DNA of 63,981 nt, counting the filler, from Octopus bimaculoides (lineage: Eukaryota): assembly GCF_001194135.2 (NCBI RefSeq). It is 5 parts of 5 records of this genome, joined end to end, with 100 filler letters (N's around TTAATTAATTAA, not from the genome) between each part and the next. Parts side by side here need not be neighbours in the genome. Positions count along the whole stretch, not along the records: positions 1 to 20,193 come from NC_069003.1; 4 more parts are not named here. One strand, given 5' to 3'. Position 1 is the stretch's first letter. Each line of letters begins with the position of its first letter. The translations under genes were made by a program, and so were the position numbers. The notes beneath the pieces are model-generated. The model worked only from the letters and a program-made list of their open reading frames with translations. It did no database searches and was not told the origin of the DNA. Shown here one piece after another: positions 1 to 11,628 of this stretch.

Positions 1-1023
1 GAGAGTGGGTATAAGAAACAGAAAACTACTTGAAACGATTGACAACAGACAAATAAATTAAAAAAAACAAAGACCCAACACTGCATTCTCCCCTGTACTT
101 GTCAAGACCCCCCCCACCAACTTGGCACCAACTTTCTATGATGTTAAGAAGTGCAGCAATCGTTGCCCCATTTGCAAGACATAGCAGCTAAATGCCTTTC
201 AAATTTGTGGCAAACCACCTTGAAAACAGATGGGATATTGATTGTTGAAAAGCTGGTCATACATCAATCCTTGTCTATCAAGGAGAGGGGGGGGGGGCTT
301 GCCCTGGTTCTGAGAAAAAACAACAACACAGCAATAAATAAATTACGTCCATGCACTTGTGGTTTCTTGATCATATCTACCATTCCCTGAAGCAAATACA
401 CTCATTTGTTAGGACCAGAGGCCTTCATATCTTTTTTTTCTATTCACTGGATCTCACAGATCAGCAATGAACGAATCAGGAACAAACGAGGATAGATGGA
501 CTGCAATTAGTAAATGAGAGCCCCATGACAAGTGTCTATTGGACGAATCAGTGGGTCACTGTATTACTTCTTCTTGAAGACCACATCAAAATGAAATTTC
601 ATTTTTTATAACCGGACACACGGACACACAGTCTCTGTAATGTTCCATTTCCTGTCAGAGTTATACCTCATGAAAGAGGAATCAGAAATTCCAGTCTGTT
701 CACATTCTTTTACTGGTTTCAATCACTGGACTATGGCCATGCTGGGACACCACCTTCAGGAAAAGTGTTAATTGTATCAAGTGTAGTGTTGGTAGTAAAC
801 TGTAATATTTTTATTGACTCCAGAAAGATGTTAGGCAAGTTTAGCTTGAATAGGATATGAACTCAGAACAGGAGGAGATAAAACCTGTTTGGTACAAAGT
901 TACAAATAACATGAAAAGAGGATGGAAGGTGGAAGTCCATAAAATAGAGAAATATTCCAACAAGTAACAAAGATGAAAGACAAGTTTTATGGCATCGATT
1001 AATGCATAAAAATTCCAACAGAC

Positions 1024-1170
1024 CTGGTTATATGTACAGTTTGTCTTCTTACACTTGCCACATTTAATGAGATCAGTGACACTTCCAGATGTCTGAGCTA
1101 TCTGATGTTCATTAATGGCTTCTTTGGTTAATTTGCTCCGCAATAACTTCATAGCGTCACTGGCCATCTC
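1024..1170 (-). CDS. TCEA1: TFIIS exon 7 (EMASDAMK...[13 protein letters not shown]); the final Zn-ribbon exon lies beyond the left edge
   Basis: 147 nt, phase 0-0, CAG acceptor and CAG|GTCTGT donor; includes the first CxxC of the Zn ribbon. No exon encoding QTRSADEP was found in 1-1023. Confidence 0.95.
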
Positions 1171-2768: not shown

Positions 2769-2923
2769 CTCAGCGGTCATTCCAGCCATTCGACAGGGGT
2801 CGATGATGCCCTGCAACACACTTTCCCGCAGTTGAGGGTTCTTCGGATCCTTTAGATTGGCCACACGACTTCGAACACGATTTTTGTACTTCATGTCAGT
2901 GTTTCGGAATTCTTGGTAGATAG
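2769..2923 (-). CDS. TCEA1: TFIIS exon 6 ([52 protein letters not shown])
   Basis: Highly conserved domain II sequence; GAG|GTAACA donor; 5' boundary inferred from reading frame. Confidence 0.92.
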
Positions 2924-2979
2924 TTACATTCGGTTAAGAAATACATTGAAGATCAAGTAATAAAAGACACAAAATGATG

Positions 2980-3039
<60 letters not shown>

Positions 3040-3062
3040 TACTGGACATCACAGAAGAGATG

Positions 3063-3140
<78 letters not shown>

Positions 3141-3245
3141 TATACTGGACATCACAGAAGAGATGATATGAGAGAGAGAGAGCACAGAACGTTTGCAAAT
3201 GAGTGAGTACAAAAAGTTTTAAGAAATGGTACATCTAAAGGATAT
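2924..3245 (-). other. U12-type (minor spliceosome) intron of TFIIS, apparent AT-AA termini
   Basis: 5' end ATATCCTTT (3245-3237), branch site TTTCTTAAC (2941-2933), only 9 nt from the end of the branch motif to the frame-restoring 3' end; no usable GT-AG alternative. Confidence 0.85.
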
Positions 3246-3299
3246 AATCTTCAATTTCTGAAGCAATTTCAGGCATTGGTTTGACACCAGGAGGGGGAT
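3246..3299 (-). CDS. TCEA1: TFIIS exon 5 (NPPPGVKPMPEIASEIED)
   Basis: TTTTCAG acceptor, 54 nt, followed directly by the U12 donor ATATCCTTT; joins exons 4 and 6 in frame, giving EIEDSIYQE (human QIEEAIYQE). Confidence 0.88.
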
Positions 3300-3917
3300 C
3301 TGAAAATAAAGGAGAGTTTAGCAATTAGTGCAGCAGGAATTTATTTATTGCTCACAGGGGGCTAAACATAGAGTGGGACAAACAAGGATAGACAAAGGGG
3401 TTAAGTCGATTACATCAAACCCAGTGTGTAACTGGTACTTATTTAATCGACTCCGAAAATGCTGAAAGGCAGAGTCGAACTCAGTGGAATTTCATTATCA
3501 TATCATCCACTTTCTCATGCTTGGATGGGTCACACAATTTATTGAGGCAGATTTTCTATGGCTGGATACCCTTCCTTCACTTGTTTCAAAGCAAAGTTAT
3601 ATTACCCCATGGCCAGACATGTTTTCCACAGAAGACTGGAAATGAAGGACACTGCATGAACGATGGTAACATTTGCTTACAACCACCATGCAATGTCAAG
3701 ATTAAAGCACATGCAGTGGGTTCCATACAGTTTCCATCTATCAAATCCACTCACAAAATGTTGGTTGGCCTGGAACTATAGCAGAAAGCACTAGCCCAAA
3801 GTGCCACAGAGTGGGACAGAACCTGAGAACACGTGGCTGGGAAGCAAGCCTCTTAAGCACACAGCCACACCAGTGAGTGATAGAACGAAGCAGAAATAAC
3901 AAATAAATGCCACTCAC

Positions 3918-4136
3918 TGTCTACTTTTAAAGCATTGAAGAGAAGCTCCCGGCATTTGAGACGTATAGGGTCACTTGTGTCATTTGGTTTAGTGCCAGAC
4001 TGGCCACCTTTGGCATCACCTTCCATTTTCTTGTTGACATCATGAGAATTACTGTCCGTGCTGTCACGTGAAGATTCATCTGTTTTGTTGACACTGTTGC
4101 TTCTAGCAGAAGACTGTGATGATGATGATGATGATT
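3918..4136 (-). CDS. TCEA1: TFIIS exon 4 (Ser-rich linker then TSDPIRLKCRELLFNALKVD)
   Basis: 219 nt, phase 1-1, open frame, CAG acceptor and GTGAGT donor; start of domain II (human SDSVRLKCREMLAAAL). Confidence 0.92.
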
Positions 4137-4284
4137 CTGGAGGTTAAACAAGAGGAGAAAGAAAAAAAAGAAACGATTTAAGAGATTCTGAAATCACATA
4201 TATTTAACAAGACAACAGCATGACAATGCTCACACCAACAAGAACAAGAACAAGAACAACAGCAGAGGGAATGTCGTTACTCAC

Positions 4285-4411
4285 TGGAATTTGTGCTTTC
4301 TCCTGGTAAGAGTTTCTTCCAACTTTTAATCAATGCCTTGGACAGACTGATCACCTCATCGGCATTACTGGACTTACGGAAGTTATTTACTGTCATTCCA
4401 ATTCTGGTTTT
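4285..4411 (-). CDS. TCEA1: TFIIS exon 3 ([42 protein letters not shown])
   Basis: TTTTCCAG acceptor, A|GTGAGT donor, 127 nt; carries the TRIG...LIKSWKKLL signature of domain I. Confidence 0.95.
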
Positions 4412-7176
4412 CTGGAAAATGATGGGCAGCAGTGAATATCTCTCGATAATTTGGAGTACAATAGCTTTCTTGATGCCTACAGAGCCCATGCCATATTTTA
4501 TAGAAAATCCCTACCATTCTTTCAATAAGATATTAAATGAAACAAAAAACAAAAAGGCATTAATACTGGATAATTGAATTCACATTACCTGGTGTAGCAT
4601 CTAATGTGTTGCAATATATAGTTTTTGTACTGACCTATTCAAGAAAGCTACGTCCAAACATATATGTTGTTAGAAACAGCAAAAGAATTTGAGGCAGCAG
4701 ATTTGAATATATCGTAGCAGCACCCTCTCACCATAATTCCTTCAAATTTCAACTTTTAAGTGAGGATTTGAAGTGATTTTAAATAAACTTTTATAATCAA
4801 CTGCCAGAAATCCTGTTGGTTTTTAATTAACTGTCAATAAATTTTGTAGTCAATAATTATATTTCCCCTTTTCAAATCTGATGAAAAGAAATCTTCTCTT
4901 GTAGCTTCTTAGGATTTCAGAGATTCTAACAAGAAGCAGAGAAGATTTCTGAATATCAATGTGGATGTCAACTTCAAAATCCAGCTCAGATTCTAGAAAG
5001 TCATTATTCAAAATCAGGGAACAGTCAAAAATCACTATGAAACAGCCATGTTGAGGTGACGATAAACGTTATTGTTTAATTATTGTTAAATAAGATATTT
5101 TCCATGGTTTGCATTTCAAAACTTTCACAGGAAAACAAATCCGCTTCAATTCCTCTTCTTTTTTTGATGTCATTTGAATGAAACTGCCAAATTCCCTTTC
5201 TTTGGACCAGCTGAGTTGTAATGGTAGAAGCACCAAAGATATCGCAGCAATCGCATGGGGGGGGGGGGGCATGCGCCCGTAACAGCTGCACCTACCATTT
5301 GTTGTTGATTCCTTACTAATCATGGCAGGCGACAACCCTCCCACCTATGGGTCTGTCAGTTTGGACAGTTGTGGCTGCTGAGGGGTTTGCAAGGTCAGAG
5401 TACAAGTCCAACCTGAACCTCTTTCGGTAGTCTTTTACAACACAGAGGAAATGCTGATCCCCACACAGCACTGGAGTGGTGTGAAATGGAGTGTTTTGCT
5501 CAAGAACACAACATGCTGCCCAGCCTGGGAATTGAACCCAGGATCTGGTGATCGAGATTGCAACAAGGTTCCACTTTCCTATCATTGGCAATATCCTAAA
5601 TAGATGGCATCAGTGTTACAGTAATGTGGGAAGGAGACAGCTTCAACATTTTTTTTATCATTATTTCTTAGAAACTGAAAAGAAGCCCATGGTATGTGTG
5701 TGTAGCCTTGTCTTGACTTCCTGTGATGATGCTAAATGAGCTTCAGAGCCATTCCAAGTGATGTGTTCATTTCCATTCTTCCATATGAAATATGTCAGCT
5801 ATAAGGAAACATTACCTTATTTGGAAATAGGAGAGAGGGTTGGCAACAGGAATGGTTATCTGGCTGTGGAAAATCTGCCTCAACAAATTCCCTCTGACCC
5901 ATGCCAGCACGGTAAAGTGGACATATGATGATGATGAAGAGGATGAATCTGCAGTCCACAGTTTGTGAGCCAATCTCTTTTGGCATTCATCAATGAGTGC
6001 ATCATCACACGTGATGTTTACTTTATAATACGGCACCTGTGTTGTATTCCCAATATGCAGTTTAAATGTCTAAACCATTTTTGGAATCCATGTTAATCTG
6101 TCAAATCTGATGTGCATTTATTCACATGTTTTGAATTAATCCTGCATTATCTCACAGCTTTCAGATTTCAATGACTCTTTATTCCTAGACTAATGACTAA
6201 TGATCAATCAAGCTCACACACCATCTTCCCTCTCTAAGTACAATAATTTTTTCTTTAAATGATTTGTGTTTTCACTTTTTTGGAGAGTAAACCCCTAAAA
6301 AAATCCCAGCTTTGGATCTGACATGAGTATTAAAATGGTCAAGAACTACTCGGCCAGATAGTCTGTATCTAAAATGGTTTATATTTGGTTGAATCACAGC
6401 ACAAAATTCTCAAATCAACTGCAAAAGTAGAACTACATCTTTAGAGAATGGTACTGGTGACAGAAAGGGACCCTAGCCACTCCTTCCCCACCACACATTA
6501 CAGTGTCTACCATTTTCAGGCATTCTTTTATTCATTCAATCAGTGAACTGTGGCCATGCTGGGGCACCATCATAAAAAGTTCCAGTCTATCATTATCAAC
6601 TCCAGGGCTTATTTCAAATTGTTATCAATCCCTTTAAACAGTTATCTCAGGATGTAAAGTGATGCACACACACACGTGTATCAGACATGGCTGTGTGGCA
6701 CCTTTGGCAAGTATCTTCTACACCAGCCCTCAGCTGACTAAGTGAATTTAGTAGATGGAAACTAAAAGAAGCCCAATGTGTGTGTTCATGTGTCTTTGCC
6801 TTTACATCAAGTGACTGTTGTTAATGAATGCCATTCAACTCCAATACTTTGCAAAAACATGTCTGGCCATGCGGAAACATTACCTCATTTGGAAAGAGCA
6901 ACGGAAAGGACATCTGGCTGTAGAAAGTTGGTCTGGATAAACTCGGACCGACCGATGCCAGCAAAGAAAAGATGATGAGAAATATACATAGCATATGTGA
7001 TGGGCTTCACCAACCATATTTCACGCTCAAGTCATTGGTTAGCCTGCCCACAGTGCTATGGAGTGGGACTGAACCCAGAACCATTTGATTGTGAAACAAA
7101 CTTTCAACCACATGGGCTATGCCAACCTCACACACCGAAAGAGGCTGGTCTAGTGAATGGAATGAAAGAGACTCAC

Positions 7177-7245
7177 CTGGAGCACATCTAGAGTCATAGG
7201 TAAATCCTGTAAGGATTTGAGGAGGTCTACTGAAGCAGCATGGTC
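7177..7245 (-). CDS. TCEA1: TFIIS exon 2 (DHAASVDLLKSLQDLPMTLDVLQ)
   Basis: Polypyrimidine-CAG acceptor and CAG|GTGAGT donor, 69 nt, phase 0-0; matches TFIIS domain I (ALDLLKELKNIPMTLELLQ). Not in the ORF track. Confidence 0.93.
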
Positions 7246-8573
7246 CTGTTGGAAAAAAGAGAGCAACGATTGATCAGCCTGATGCCAACAACAATAAACA
7301 AACAAAAACAAGCACATCTAATACAAATCATCCTTCTTGTTAAGACAAATTGCTCAATGCATCAGGCTCCCTAATTTTTATCAAGAGTGGGCTTGCTTCC
7401 ATGGTTTGCTAGTCCCCAGTTGAACCGTCCAACCCATTCCAGCATGGAAAACGGACATTAAACGACGATGATGGTTTTAGAGAAAGGTAAAATGTATGTG
7501 TGTGTGTGTAGCTATAGAAATGAAGAACAAGACAAAATAATTGAAGCTTGTGACAAAAAAAAAAAAAAAAAAAGTTTGCCTTTTTCCCCATTCTATTTTG
7601 AGAATGCAGAGCTGTAGGATGTTATGTCCACTTGAAATGTGAATATGACAACACTATTCTTGTCATTCAATCTCAAACGAGGAGCAGAAAAGACAATTTC
7701 CACACACACATTTATGACTGCACAGTTATAGCTATACACACGGGTGTGTGTGTATATATAGTTCATTTTTATGCCTGTTTGTCTATGCTATGTTGGGTTA
7801 ACCCAGCCATTCTCAATATTACAATATAATGAGACGTGATGTGCAGGGGCAATTTGTTCAACTATACCTTTCAAGGTGGTAGTGCCTCACAGCATGGCTG
7901 CAGTCCAATGTCTGAACAAATAAAAGAGAGGGAAAGAAGACAGTATATTGCTAAACACACTGTGCCAGAAAGGATGGGATTATAACAAGGAGAACATCTT
8001 TGATCACAGGTTTGTTATATCAAGGCTGAGATAAGATGTTACATGGTTGCTCAATGTGTTAGAAATAGCAGCCAGATCGCTCTTAAATTGCATTGTAATG
8101 TTTTTGAAAAGGAAAGATGCACTGAGTAGTCTAGCCCTTAATTGAAAAGGCAAAAGAAACTGGACTCCAGTTGGAATGTCTTTGAACACATTAATTCAAT
8201 GAAGGCTAAACAACACTGACGTCTGGTTGACAGTGGTACCTTCTGAGAGACAACATGGGAAGGATATAACTGTTCATAATTATGTGTAATGAAGTCGTCC
8301 AGGGTAGACCAGTCTACAACAATACGTTACAATTTCAAGTATTTCCTGAGAGCGGAACTGTTAGTGTTTTTTAAAGTTGAGTGATTCTTAGAAACTGAGA
8401 GATGCTCAAAGAAATTATCAGAATTAATAAGCAGAGAACTGTTCTAGGAAAGAACATTACAAAATGCGTTATCCAGGGAAGCAAGAATGCATGAGTGTGT
8501 GTGCGATTTAAAACATGTACTTCCCAACCACATGGCTCTGGGTTCAATTCCACTGTGTGGCACCGTGGGCAAG

Positions 8574-8855
8574 ACGAGGCGATGACTACGGACCGAGACC
8601 TTTGGAAATGGGCTGTGCGTGAGAAGACCCGGCAAGCCAAGTAAGATCGTTGCCAGTGCCCCTGGACTGGTTCTTGTGCGGGTGGCACATGAGATGCACC
8701 ATTTTGAGCGTGGCCGTTGCCAGTACCGCCTGACTGGCTCCTGTAGGATTTTCGAGCGAGATCGTTGCCAGTGCCCCTGGACTGGCTTGTGCGGGTGGCA
8801 CATAAAAGACACCATTTCGAGCGTGGCCGTTTTCGTGCGGGTGACACGTAAAAGC
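8574..8855 (+). mobile_element. RTE LINE 3' fragment (same family as 18363-19047), ends at a gap
   Basis: Near-identical to about 18555-18870. Confidence 0.88.
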
Positions 8856-9075
8856 NNNNNNNNNNNNNNNNNNNNNNNNNNNNNNNNNNNNNNNNNNNNN
8901 NNNNNNNNNNNNNNNNNNNNNNNNNNNNNNNNNNNNNNNNNNNNNNNNNNNNNNNNNNNNNNNNNNNNNNNNNNNNNNNNNNNNNNNNNNNNNNNNNNNN
9001 NNNNNNNNNNNNNNNNNNNNNNNNNNNNNNNNNNNNNNNNNNNNNNNNNNNNNNNNNNNNNNNNNNNNNNNNNNN

Positions 9076-9145
<70 letters not shown>

Positions 9146-10453
9146 ACACGCGCATATTGCTAAAAAAAATTAGAGAAGTATTTGAAAACCTGCACACATT
9201 AAAATGATGGCATATGTTGCTTGTGATGAAAAAGTAACGTTCAGAGAAAAGATAGCAAATTCGATAGCTTTTCGTTTTGTTTTAAAGGAGGAAATTGAAA
9301 ACATACAATTACGATATATACACTACGGGGTGTGATAGTGGAGGGTTTTATTAGTCAAATAACGAATAGCGTAACACATTTTCCCTTTCCATACAGGTTT
9401 TTGAATCTTCCAAACCATAGAATGTTTTTTCTAGTTGTTTCTCGATAATAGACCTTGAAATATTTTTGCGACACCGGCCGGAAGAAATATACTGGACCGG
9501 GACGATTAGCAATGATTTAATCAGCAATCTGCTTGGACAATCAACAGAGGGACACGCCGTGTTCCAAGCCATTTCTATTACTACTACAACTATTCTAGCT
9601 TCTATGAACACACAGAGAAGCTCTATCCTTACTGTAACTGACCTAAGACACTCGAAATTCACTTCATATCGTCACCCTTACTTGGTAGGTGTTGCGACAG
9701 CCATAACAACTTTCACAAGGACACTGATGGCGAAAATTAAGCTAATTACAAAATTAAACAGCTTGTGTGTATGTATGCGAGCGAGCTAGTGTGACATATA
9801 AACAGCCACTTCTATCTTGGTGTTCAAAAGTGCGGAACTGTACTTGAAAAGAAAAAAAGTCTGGTCTGCTACTTCCAGGCGCCCGCAAACAACCCAAACG
9901 ATGAGCGTTAACACAAACCAAGCTGAAAAGAAAAAAACTTTTTACGTCTAAACAGAAGTTCTTATTGCTAGCATCAAATATGGCACAGGTGAATCAAAGA
10001 GCGTTTCAACTCGTCCTGCACTGAATCCAAACTGGACACCCAAGATTTCAGTCGTGCAAATAATAGGAAGTTTATTAGAAAAACGAAAGAATTCAACTTG
10101 TCTAAACTTTACGCAAACTGTATTTGCTATTTTTTTTTCTCCCCTTTGTTTATTAAAGACCGGATGATTAATTTACTTCTAAACTTATCTATCTCCGTCT
10201 CTCTCTCTCTCTTTTTACCATCATATCGGACATTTCTAGTCTTAGGTATTATAACTGTGAATAAAAGACGAAGTGGTCTCGACAGGAACGTCTTTCGACC
10301 ATAGGGTTGCTCTGTCAACACTGACGTGAGACACCAATCAATAGTTATCGAATAACAACAATATAAAAGAAGAGATCCATCGATCCGCTCCAATTTGTGT
10401 TGGTTGAGGGAGTTTTATGGCGGGTGTTGTTGGGTGGAATCTAAACATTAGCT

Positions 10454-10467
10454 ACGTCACTTCCGGT
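10454..10467. promoter_or_regulatory. Composite ETS-CRE motif (ACCGGAAGTGACGT on the minus strand) in TFIIS intron 1
   Basis: Match to the overlapping ETS/CRE promoter motif, in CpG-retaining sequence; ATGGCGG nearby at 10417-10423. Confidence 0.5.
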
Positions 10468-11559
10468 ACAGCTCTATTGCTAGCATGGAGATGAGAGAAA
10501 GAAAGAAGGATTAGAAAGAAACAAGACAGAAAAACGTAGACATTTCTGAATAAAACTGACCAAGCTGTTGGCAATAAGCAACATCAAAAATAAAAGTGAA
10601 ACGGAAATAAGACCAGCTCTAATGGGTCGTCCTAAAACAAAATAAAAGGTGCGATCTGGAGTACAAAATGGGAGGAAAGGGTTTAGTTTGTAACACCCCC
10701 ACCCACAGGGAATTTGGCGAGGGGGGATGTATTTATTTATCTGGAATTTTTTTTTCAATCATACAGTGTTTCTTCGGATAATTTAAAGTGGAGTTTCTCT
10801 TCCCAGATAAATCGTATAAAAAATTTGAGTTTTGGCATTGTGAAAAGACTAGGGCTGTATTGTTACTGCGAACTGTGACATGGGTGGACTACACTGAATC
10901 GAAAGACATAGTACGTGGGCGCTTAACCTGGTGGAAATGGCAGCCAAATCTCCCTCAAATCATGCTATCACCTTCAAAGCATGCACAAATTGAACTATGT
11001 TGTCCCAAAAAGGACTACGTCCGATTAAAAAGAAAGATTAAAGAGATGGTCACAAATGGAAAGGCTTTGATCAGGTCGATCTGGAGATAAACAAACAGCA
11101 CTTTTTTGTTTGCTTGGTAGAAAGAGAGGGGGTGGGCTTAACAAACATATTAATAATTGAAATAAATAACCCTGTCCAACAAACGAACGATAGACGACAA
11201 GAGACATAGAATTACTTTAGATGTTGATTAGAAACAATTTGCAAATTAATTAAAATTGCTTTTAAATAAACAAACAGGCAAACAAAAAAAAAAGAAAAGA
11301 GTTACAACTCATTAGTAAGATGGTGAAGAGAGTTTTAGGGCTGCTTCTTCTAATTTTGTTCATTAATGTTGCAAATAGTTGAAAGACAGCCGCCCAGTCC
11401 ATAGAAGTGGAGATCAGAATGAAGCAATGCCAAACTTTACTACCAACACACACACTTAGATGTATATATGTGTGTGTGGTGTTAAAGTTATGTAGAGATA
11501 TAGGTAGATGTATTAATGCGTGCACGATCAACGTGTGTTGTGGTGGTCGTCCTACTTAC

Positions 11560-11628
11560 CGATGTTCCACTGGATATCATCTTCTCCAGTTTTTTACCAA
11601 TCTTCAATACCTCGTCTTCGCATCCCAT
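11560..11628 (-). CDS. TCEA1: Transcription elongation factor TFIIS, coding exon 1 (MGCEDEVLKIGKKLEKMISSGTS)
   Basis: ATG at 11628, 23 codons, donor G|GTAAGT, phase 0; resembles the TFIIS N-terminus (human MEDEVVRFAKKMDKM). Confidence 0.92.

What the first reader, a model, noticed from the sequence alone, without database searches (positions are those of the whole stretch)
2924..3245. Minor-spliceosome intron in TFIIS with apparent AT-AA ends and a competing AC one base away
Seen: a perfect U12 donor (ATATCCTTT) and branch site (TTTCTTAAC). Frame and homology (GAT T|CT ATC TAC, giving EDSIY) put the 3' end at ...GTAA|CT, i.e. AA. Using the canonical AC one base downstream shifts the frame and reaches TGA after 10 codons. 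Using the AC at the end of the branch motif adds 3 residues in frame. Known: AT-AA is a rare U12 subtype, and I recall a U12 intron in vertebrate TFIIS genes (position to be confirmed). Inference: a 1-nt acceptor choice could switch TFIIS between productive and NMD transcripts.
Basis: partly seen in the sequence, partly recalled or inferred. Interest (0 to 1): 0.7.

Follow-up and report, generated by a model that had tools for sequence, protein, structure and literature searches.

The report
Octopus TFIIS minor intron ending AA
The octopus gene for transcription factor TFIIS carries an ancient minor-spliceosome intron whose last base changed from C to A in the octopod lineage; this is a real but already known rare intron type, and the suggested one-base splicing "switch" remains untested.

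Summary
The window is Octopus bimaculoides, with a single-copy TFIIS (TCEA) gene on the minus strand. Between exon 5 (3299-3246) and exon 6 (2923-2769) lies a 322-nt intron (3245-2924). Its donor is ATATCCTTT and its branch site is TTTCTTAAC, 9 nt before the intron end. Only an ...AA| end keeps the reading frame (EDSIYQEF), and that model is 100% identical to RefSeq.

An assembly error is excluded. The same acceptor 26-mer is present in O. vulgaris, O. sinensis and an independent Logan assembly. Argonauta has the same ...AA|CT arrangement.

The intron sits at the same position and phase in Sepia (AT-AC, confirmed by RNA contigs), a second decapodiform, a chiton, Oryzias TCEA1 and Lingula (GT-AG U12-type). 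Human and mouse TCEA1-3 are listed minor-intron genes. So one C-to-A change at the last intron base occurred in the octopod stem. The "competing AC" is that new A followed by the conserved first exon base C.

AT-AA is the commonest non-canonical U12 class, so this is a new member of a known kind. I found no octopus spliced reads, so use of the AC site and any NMD switch stay hypothetical.

The parts
3246..3299 (-). TFIIS exon 5 (54 nt, ...NPPPGVKPMPEIASEIED + first base T of the Ser codon); ends in phase 1
   Evidence: the spliced model is 100% identical to XP_014769991.1
3237..3245 (-). U12-type 5' splice site ATATCCTTT (intron +1 to +9). Read-through gives D-Y-I-L-stop (TAG at 3237-3235).
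   Evidence: The same donor is present in O. vulgaris, O. sinensis, Octopus sp., Argonauta, Sepia, a second decapodiform, a chiton and Oryzias. The O. vulgaris gene model P0004 ends ...EIEDYIL.
2924..3245 (-). 322-nt minor (U12-type) intron with AT...AA termini
2980..3182 (.). (GA)n/(CT)n microsatellite with a 103-nt duplication, filling most of the intron. It accounts for the length differences between species (191, 322, 322 and 674 nt).
2933..2941 (-). Branch-site motif TTTCTTAAC (branch A at 2934 or 2935), 9 nt upstream of the intron end
   Evidence: It pairs with the U12 snRNA GUAAGGAA found in the same genome.
2924..2925 (-). Inferred productive 3' terminal dinucleotide AA (10-11 nt from the branch A)
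   Evidence: Frame and homology. RefSeq models of O. bimaculoides and O. sinensis read EDSIYQEF. The spacing equals that of the RNA-verified AC site of Sepia.
2923..2924 (-). Potential competing AC (last intron A plus first exon C). Its use removes one base and leads to TGA at 2893-2891.
   Evidence: usage untested
2769..2923 (-). TFIIS exon 6 (155 nt; [26 protein letters not shown]...MTAE, TFIIS central domain)
1024..1170 (-). TFIIS exon 7 ([10 protein letters not shown]...[10 protein letters not shown]). The final Zn-ribbon exon is missing; an assembly gap lies just below the window.
3918..11628 (-). Upstream exons 1-4 of the same gene (11628-11560, 7245-7177, 4411-4285, 4136-3918), all bordered by GT-AG introns

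Best explanation
This is the ancient, positionally conserved U12-type intron of the TFIIS/TCEA gene, removed by the minor spliceosome.

In the common ancestor of octopods the last intron base mutated from C to A. That converted a canonical AT-AC intron into the known rare AT-AA subtype. The distance from branch site to 3' end (motif plus 9 nt) and the position of the junction did not change.

Productive mRNA is made by cleavage after AA (2924|2923), giving GAT T|CT = Asp-Ser. The AC one base downstream is a by-product: it is the new terminal A followed by the conserved first exon base C, the second position of the Ala/Ser codon G|CT or T|CT.

Shown here:
- the sequence, the motifs and the reading frame;
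- conservation of the acceptor in five octopods;
- AT-AC at the same site in two decapodiforms (RNA-verified in Sepia), a chiton and a fish;
- U11, U12 and U6atac genes in the same genome.

Inferred: that the AA junction is the one used in octopus mRNA, and that the excision is U12-dependent.
For: - Sequence and frame.
- The AA-spliced model is 100% identical over 280 aa to RefSeq XP_014769991.1. XP_052831953.1 and the O. sinensis models XP_029649828.1 and XP_036368443.1 also read EDSIYQEF.
- The acceptor 26-mer TTCTTAACCGAATGTAACTATCTACC is identical in O. vulgaris L013 and O. sinensis L020, and the same sequence is present in the Logan assembly L021.
- Argonauta has TTCCTTAACCGAACGCAA|CTATCTTCC. 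Read with an AA end this gives Ala, as in Sepia and the chiton.
- Sepia genome reads ...TTCCTTAACTAACCTTAC|CAATATACC, and four RNA-seq contigs read GAAGATG|CAATATACC.
- A second decapodiform reads ...TTCCTTAACTGAGTTCAC|CTATT.
- The chiton and Oryzias are AT-AC, and Lingula has a GT-AG U12-type intron, all at the same phase-1 position.
- TCEA1-3 are listed as minor-intron genes in human and mouse.
- AT-AA is an established natural subtype that is known to switch with AT-AC between species.
- Genes found in G000: U12 at 129.7 bits, U6atac at 98 bits, U11 at 94.5 bits.
Against: - No octopus spliced transcript or junction read could be retrieved. All three protein searches returned only genome-derived octopus entries. 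The AA junction therefore rests on frame, homology and third-party gene models whose evidence I cannot inspect.
- Annotated non-canonical termini are sometimes placed by homology rather than by reads (caution in PMC7367187).
- The downstream AC has the preferred terminal base and an equally acceptable spacing, so from sequence alone it should compete.
- The O. vulgaris annotation failed to splice this intron at all and split the gene in two.
Confidence: 0.82

Rival explanations
1. Acceptor competition as a regulatory device. The minor spliceosome uses both AA (productive) and the AC one base downstream (frameshift, stop after 10 codons, NMD), and the ratio tunes TFIIS output.
For: - The AC lies 11-12 nt from the branch A. 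That is inside the 11-13 nt optimum quoted in PMC3584512, which also states that U12-type 3' splice-site selection is error-prone.
- The premature stop at 2893-2891 lies upstream of at least two exon junctions.
- The AAC arrangement is kept in all five octopods examined.
- From memory, not checked here: Dietrich et al. 2001 (Mol Cell Biol) found C to be the most active terminal base and a spacing of about 12 nt to be preferred.
Against: - No read evidence of any kind.
- The C is the second base of the Ala/Ser codon and was already present before the AA arose (Sepia, second decapodiform and chiton all have AC|C), so its conservation needs no regulatory explanation.
- TFIIS is single-copy here, so heavy loss to NMD would be costly.
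- Alternative 3' site use at U12 introns is generally considered noise.
Confidence: 0.12
2. Assembly or sequencing error: a C was dropped, and the real sequence is ...TAAC|CT, an ordinary AT-AC intron.
For: The O. bimaculoides assembly is gappy near this gene (N runs; the last exon is missing).
Against: The same sequence with no extra C is found in the independent assemblies of O. vulgaris (GCA_951406725.2), O. sinensis (GCA_006345805.1) and a Logan assembly of SRR11869390. Argonauta hians also has ...GCAA|CTATC.
Confidence: 0.01
3. Both borders are shifted by one base (intron TATCC...GTAAC, 'TA-AC'). This keeps the frame and gives Asp-Tyr-Ile in Octopus.
For: It is arithmetically in frame in both Octopus (GAT TAT ATC) and Argonauta (GAT GAT ATC), and it uses the canonical terminal C. 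One gastropod has Tyr at this position (P0007).
Against: - In Sepia, RNA shows cleavage exactly before ATATCC. No U12 class with a TA start appears in the tables of minor-intron termini that I read.
- The RefSeq models read Ser, not Tyr.
- This reading would put Asp in Argonauta and Tyr in Octopus, where Sepia, squid and chiton have Ala. The AA reading gives Ala and Ser.
Confidence: 0.03
4. The AC at the end of the branch motif (2934-2933) is the real or an alternative acceptor, adding Asn-Val-Thr in frame.
For: It is in frame. An upstream weak branch-like sequence TTACTTGAT lies about 20 nt before it.
Against: - It destroys the only good branch site.
- The weak upstream motif is not conserved in Argonauta.
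- No homologue carries a 3-residue insertion here, and all gene models lack it.
Confidence: 0.02

Closest known systems
U12-type intron of vertebrate TCEA1/TCEA2/TCEA3 (listed minor-intron genes, Olthof et al. 2019, PMC6717393)
   Same: Same gene family, same codon position and phase (just before I-[YF]-x-E-[FI], phase 1), and an A-type donor ATATCCTT(T). Shown directly for Oryzias TCEA1. Inferred for human and mouse from the three exon bases listed before each donor.
   Different: Oryzias TCEA1 ends in AC. The 3' termini of human and mouse TCEA1-3 were not examined here. The octopod intron ends in AA, with an AC offset by one base.
Natural AT-AA minor introns (e.g. RASGRP4, MSH3 in human; Sheth et al. 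2006, PMC1557818; Larue & Roy 2023, PMC10639083)
   Same: AT start, U12 donor and branch consensus, and terminal AA. AT-AC to AT-AA switching between species is documented: MSH3 is AT-AA in human and AT-AC in mouse. AT-AA is about 1.1% of conserved animal minor introns and the commonest non-canonical class.
   Different: This is a different gene and lineage. Here the switch can be placed on the octopod stem, and the junction is followed by C, which creates an out-of-frame AC.
Orthologous AT-AC intron of Sepia pharaonis TFIIS
   Same: Identical donor ATATCCTTT, branch motif TTCCTTAAC, the same 9-nt spacer length and the same junction position.
   Different: The last base is C, and RNA contigs prove the junction. 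In octopods the last base is A and the junction is inferred.
ADAR2 self-editing that turns an intronic AA into an AI (AG-like) acceptor (recalled from Rueter et al. 1999; not checked here)
   Same: An AA dinucleotide serving as a 3' splice site, in an animal group with very heavy A-to-I editing.
   Different: That case is a U2-type site and depends on a double-stranded RNA structure. No such structure is predicted around this 3' end (z = +1.43). AT-AA introns are spliced without editing in other organisms.

Membership tests
U12-type (minor) intron | 5' splice site matching /RTATCCTT directly at the exon border | tested here: met
   ATATCCTTT at 3245-3237. It is the only copy in the window.
U12-type (minor) intron | Branch-site motif TTCCTTRAY close to the 3' end (optimum about 11-13 nt from the branch A) | tested here: met
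   TTTCTTAAC at 2941-2933, with one U.G wobble. The branch A is 10-11 nt from the AA end.
U12-type (minor) intron | Minor-spliceosome snRNAs present in the same genome | tested here: met
   U12 at 129.7 bits, U6atac at 98.2 bits, U11 at 94.5 bits. U4atac was not searched.
U12-type (minor) intron | Orthology to introns accepted as U12-type | tested here: met
   Same position and phase in Sepia (RNA-verified), a second decapodiform, a chiton, Oryzias TCEA1 and Lingula. Human and mouse TCEA1-3 are listed minor-intron genes.
U12-type (minor) intron | Excision depends on U11/U12/U4atac/U6atac | not testable with these tools
   Needs a minigene or snRNA-blocking experiment.
AT-AA subtype of U12 introns | The junction actually used in mRNA lies after ...AA | tested here: inconclusive
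   It is required by frame and homology and matches four RefSeq models and the Argonauta model. No octopus transcript or read could be retrieved.
AT-AA subtype of U12 introns | The genomic sequence at the 3' end is genuine, not an assembly artefact | tested here: met
   Identical in four Octopus assemblies, and the same layout in Argonauta.
TFIIS / TCEA transcription elongation factor | N-terminal TFIIS/Med26 domain (PF08711), central domain (PF07500) and C-terminal Zn ribbon (PF01096) | tested here: met
   PF08711 and PF07500 are recorded for the O. bimaculoides protein. The Zn-ribbon exon is lost in an assembly gap, but it is present in O. sinensis, O. vulgaris and Argonauta orthologues with 90-100% identical upstream sequence.
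Alternative-splicing-coupled NMD switch | Both junctions are observed in RNA, and the unproductive one rises when NMD is blocked | not testable with these tools
   No read data. Only the in-silico premature stop is available.
Alternative-splicing-coupled NMD switch | Conservation of the alternative site beyond what coding constraint explains | tested here: not met
   The C that completes the AC is the second codon base. It pre-dates the AA state (Sepia, second decapodiform and chiton have AC|C).

The most novel reading that the evidence does not exclude
Octopods have lived for a very long time with a TFIIS minor intron in which the productive acceptor (AA) sits one base upstream of an out-of-frame AC. 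By published in-vitro rules that AC should be at least as good a site. If both are used, octopod TFIIS output is permanently throttled by a 1-nt acceptor choice. If only AA is used, the minor spliceosome positions its 3' cleavage with single-base precision against its own sequence preference. Either result would make this a natural test case for how U12-type 3' splice sites are measured.
Probability: 0.15. Interest if true: 0.5.

Novelty: new member of a known kind. Interest (0 to 1): 0.27.

Why it matters
The finding adds a well-anchored example of AT-AC to AT-AA subtype switching, and the change can be placed on one branch, the octopod stem.

It also explains two annotation problems. The O. 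vulgaris TFIIS gene is split into two models, and pipelines that forbid non-canonical termini will break this single-copy gene, which is presumably essential.

The AA|C arrangement offers a simple natural substrate for asking how the minor spliceosome picks its 3' cleavage site.

It does not reveal a new mechanism. Minor introns in TCEA genes and AT-AA termini are both documented.

Tried and rejected
1. Direct transcript evidence in Octopus. I ran three searches of the 5.8-billion-protein collection with the full-length, 119-aa and 70-aa queries, plus cluster listing. They returned only genome-derived octopus entries. The only Logan contig (L021) is unspliced. Junction usage therefore could not be measured.

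2. Assembly error: rejected.

3. An A-to-I editing or double-stranded RNA explanation for the AA acceptor. The 151 nt around the 3' end fold worse than shuffled sequence (z = +1.43), so there is no support.

4. A paralogue that might buffer frameshifted output. Only this locus matches the central domain. A 65%-identical Zn-ribbon hit on contig C10 is another gene.

5. U2-type rescue. There is no AG in the last 60 nt of the intron. The first AG, inside exon 6, would create T|AA, a stop. GT at intron +14 lies behind the in-frame TAG (read directly).

6. The primary papers on U12 3' site rules (Dietrich 2005, Levine & Durbin 2001) are not held in the library. What I state from Dietrich 2001 is from memory.

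7. No paper on cephalopod minor introns or on this intron was found.

Full report
**What is there.** The window maps to G000:C23:37042620-37062868 of a 2.34-Gb genome. Its best protein match names it Octopus bimaculoides. A TFIIS/TCEA gene runs on the minus strand. Its exons are 11628-11560, 7245-7177, 4411-4285, 4136-3918, 3299-3246, 2923-2769 and 1170-1024. Every intron is GT-AG except the one in the finding. The spliced product is 100% identical over all 280 residues to RefSeq XP_014769991.1, which carries the TFIIS N-terminal and central domains. The central domain matches nowhere else in the genome, so the gene is single-copy by this search.

**Checking the observation.** Exon 5 ends GAA GAT T at 3246. 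The intron begins ATATCCTTT (3245-3237). TTTCTTAAC lies at 2941-2933. The intron ends ...CCGAATGTAA at 2924, and exon 6 begins CT ATC TAC.

- Splicing at AA gives EIEDSIYQEF.
- Splicing at the AC one base further gives [12 protein letters not shown] followed by a stop.
- Splicing at the AC that ends the branch motif gives [11 protein letters not shown].

Both motifs are unique in the window, against chance expectations of 0.41 and 0.67. They sit exactly at the borders set by homology. The branch site departs from the consensus TTCCTTAAC by one base, giving a U.G wobble with the U12 snRNA. The genome encodes U12 (129.7 bits), U6atac (98 bits) and U11 (94.5 bits).

**Not an assembly artefact.** The 26-mer TTCTTAACCGAATGTAACTATCTACC across the acceptor is identical in the independent assemblies of O. 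vulgaris (L013) and O. sinensis (L020). The same sequence is present in a Logan read assembly of another Octopus (L021, SRR11869390). Intron length varies because of a (CT)n microsatellite: 322, 322, 674 and 191 nt. The last 31 intronic bases, by contrast, are identical in all four Octopus sequences. Argonauta hians has GAT G|ATATCCTTTAC ... TTCCTTAACCGAACGCAA|CT ATC TTC. That is again an AA end followed by C, and its annotated protein reads EVEDAIFQEF.

**Origin of the AA.** The same intron position and phase occur widely:

| Species | Locus | Termini | 3' end |
|---|---|---|---|
| Sepia pharaonis | L015 | AT-AC | TTCCTTAACTAACCTTAC\|CA |
| second decapodiform | L030 | AT-AC | TTCCTTAACTGAGTTCAC\|CT |
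| chiton Liolophura | L022 | AT-AC | TCCTTAACACTTTTAC\|CT |
| Oryzias TCEA1 | L023 | AT-AC | TTTCTTGACCCGCCTCCAC\|GT |
| Lingula | L024 | GT-AG, U12-type (donor GTATCTTT) | TTCCTTAAC + 11 nt |

For Sepia the junction is proven. Four RNA-seq contigs read GAAGATG-CAATATACC. Human and mouse TCEA1, TCEA2 and TCEA3 are all listed as minor-intron genes. Their donor contexts AAG|, AAT| and ATC|ATATCCT fit this codon position.

Decapodiforms and octopods share the same 9-nt spacer between the branch motif and the intron end. The only difference at the junction is the last base: C in decapodiforms and A in octopods. The simplest history is one C-to-A substitution in the octopod stem.

**Which acceptor is used.** The evidence for AA is as follows.

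- It is the only choice that keeps the frame with an unshifted donor.
- It yields Ala in Argonauta, as in Sepia, squid and chiton, and Ser in Octopus.
- Four RefSeq models in two Octopus species use it.

The alternative of shifting both borders by one base (TA...AC) is also in frame. It would give Tyr in Octopus and Asp in Argonauta, it contradicts the RefSeq models, and it has no precedent. Sepia RNA shows cleavage exactly before ATATCC.

I could not obtain octopus junction reads. Three database searches found only genome-derived octopus proteins. The O. vulgaris annotation could not splice the intron at all. It ends one model at ...EIEDYIL, which is read-through to the in-frame TAG, and starts a second model at MKYKN. 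That behaviour is what a pipeline forbidding AT-AA would produce.

**The proposed switch.** The AC is 11-12 nt from the branch A, and the AA is 10-11 nt. A review gives 11-13 nt as the optimum and calls U12 3' site choice error-prone. Some AC use is therefore plausible, and it would give a premature stop upstream of two exon junctions. But nothing here shows that it occurs or that it is regulated. The conservation of the C is already explained by coding. No RNA structure surrounds the site (z = +1.43), so an editing-based explanation has no support.

**Comparison with what is known.** AT-AA is a documented natural U12 subtype. Sheth et al. counted 3 human and 4 mouse cases, and MSH3 is AT-AA in human but AT-AC in mouse. 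AT-AA is the commonest non-canonical class, about 1.1% of conserved animal minor introns. A-type introns as a class are spliced less efficiently and depend on CENATAC. Minor introns in TCEA genes are also known. This is therefore a new member of a known kind. It is of modest interest, mainly as a cleanly dated subtype switch, as an annotation trap, and as a possible natural substrate for studying 3' site choice.

**Verdict.** The main explanation is held at 0.82, and interest is scored at 0.27.

Noticed in passing
L013 10001-27434 (O. vulgaris GCA_951406725.2): The O. vulgaris annotation splits TFIIS into two genes exactly at this intron. One is a 180-aa model ending EIEDYIL (read-through of the U12 donor). 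The other is a 117-aa model starting at MKYKN.
   Followed up: yes
window 1-1023 and L012 8900-10000 (G000:C23 just below the window): The last TFIIS exon (Zn ribbon, VQTRSADEPMTTF...RWKFC) is absent from the O. bimaculoides assembly, and an N gap abuts the window. As a result both RefSeq models have false C-termini: ...[19 protein letters not shown], and a read-through into intron 7. The only Zn-ribbon hit in the genome is a 65%-identical sequence on contig C10.
   Followed up: partly
window 2980-3182: A (GA)n/(CT)n microsatellite with a 103-nt internal duplication fills the intron. Its expansion makes the O. sinensis intron 674 nt, against 322 nt in O. bimaculoides and O. vulgaris and 191 nt in another Octopus.
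   Followed up: partly
window 3339-3400 (intron 4): A roughly 60-nt segment is a dispersed repeat, with at least 40 copies at 89-97% identity across many chromosomes of the genome.
   Followed up: no
window 8371-8850 and 18293-18900: Two copies of the same repeat, about 450-500 nt long, each interrupted by or next to an N run. Their long minus-strand reading frames are nearly identical (...QSRGTGNDLARKSY.SQSGGTGN.HAQNGASHVPPAQEPVQGHWQ...). Probably a transposable-element fragment.
   Followed up: no
L013, L015, L020, L022, L024 (upstream of TFIIS); window above 11700: A gene with ICAP-1/PID domains lies head-to-head upstream of TFIIS in Octopus, Sepia, the chiton and Lingula. This looks like conserved microsynteny across lophotrochozoans. 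A PID-like exon may be at window 14309-14458 (+).
   Followed up: no
G000 genome-wide: U6atac gives 35 hits above the Rfam gathering score, from 98 down to 34.6 bits, whereas U12 gives one and U11 three. This suggests many U6atac copies or pseudogenes in this genome.
   Followed up: no
L020 (O. sinensis), protein P0122: O. sinensis RefSeq isoform X2 skips exon 2, removing DHAASVDLLKSLQDLPMTLDVLQ, which is part of the N-terminal domain.
   Followed up: no
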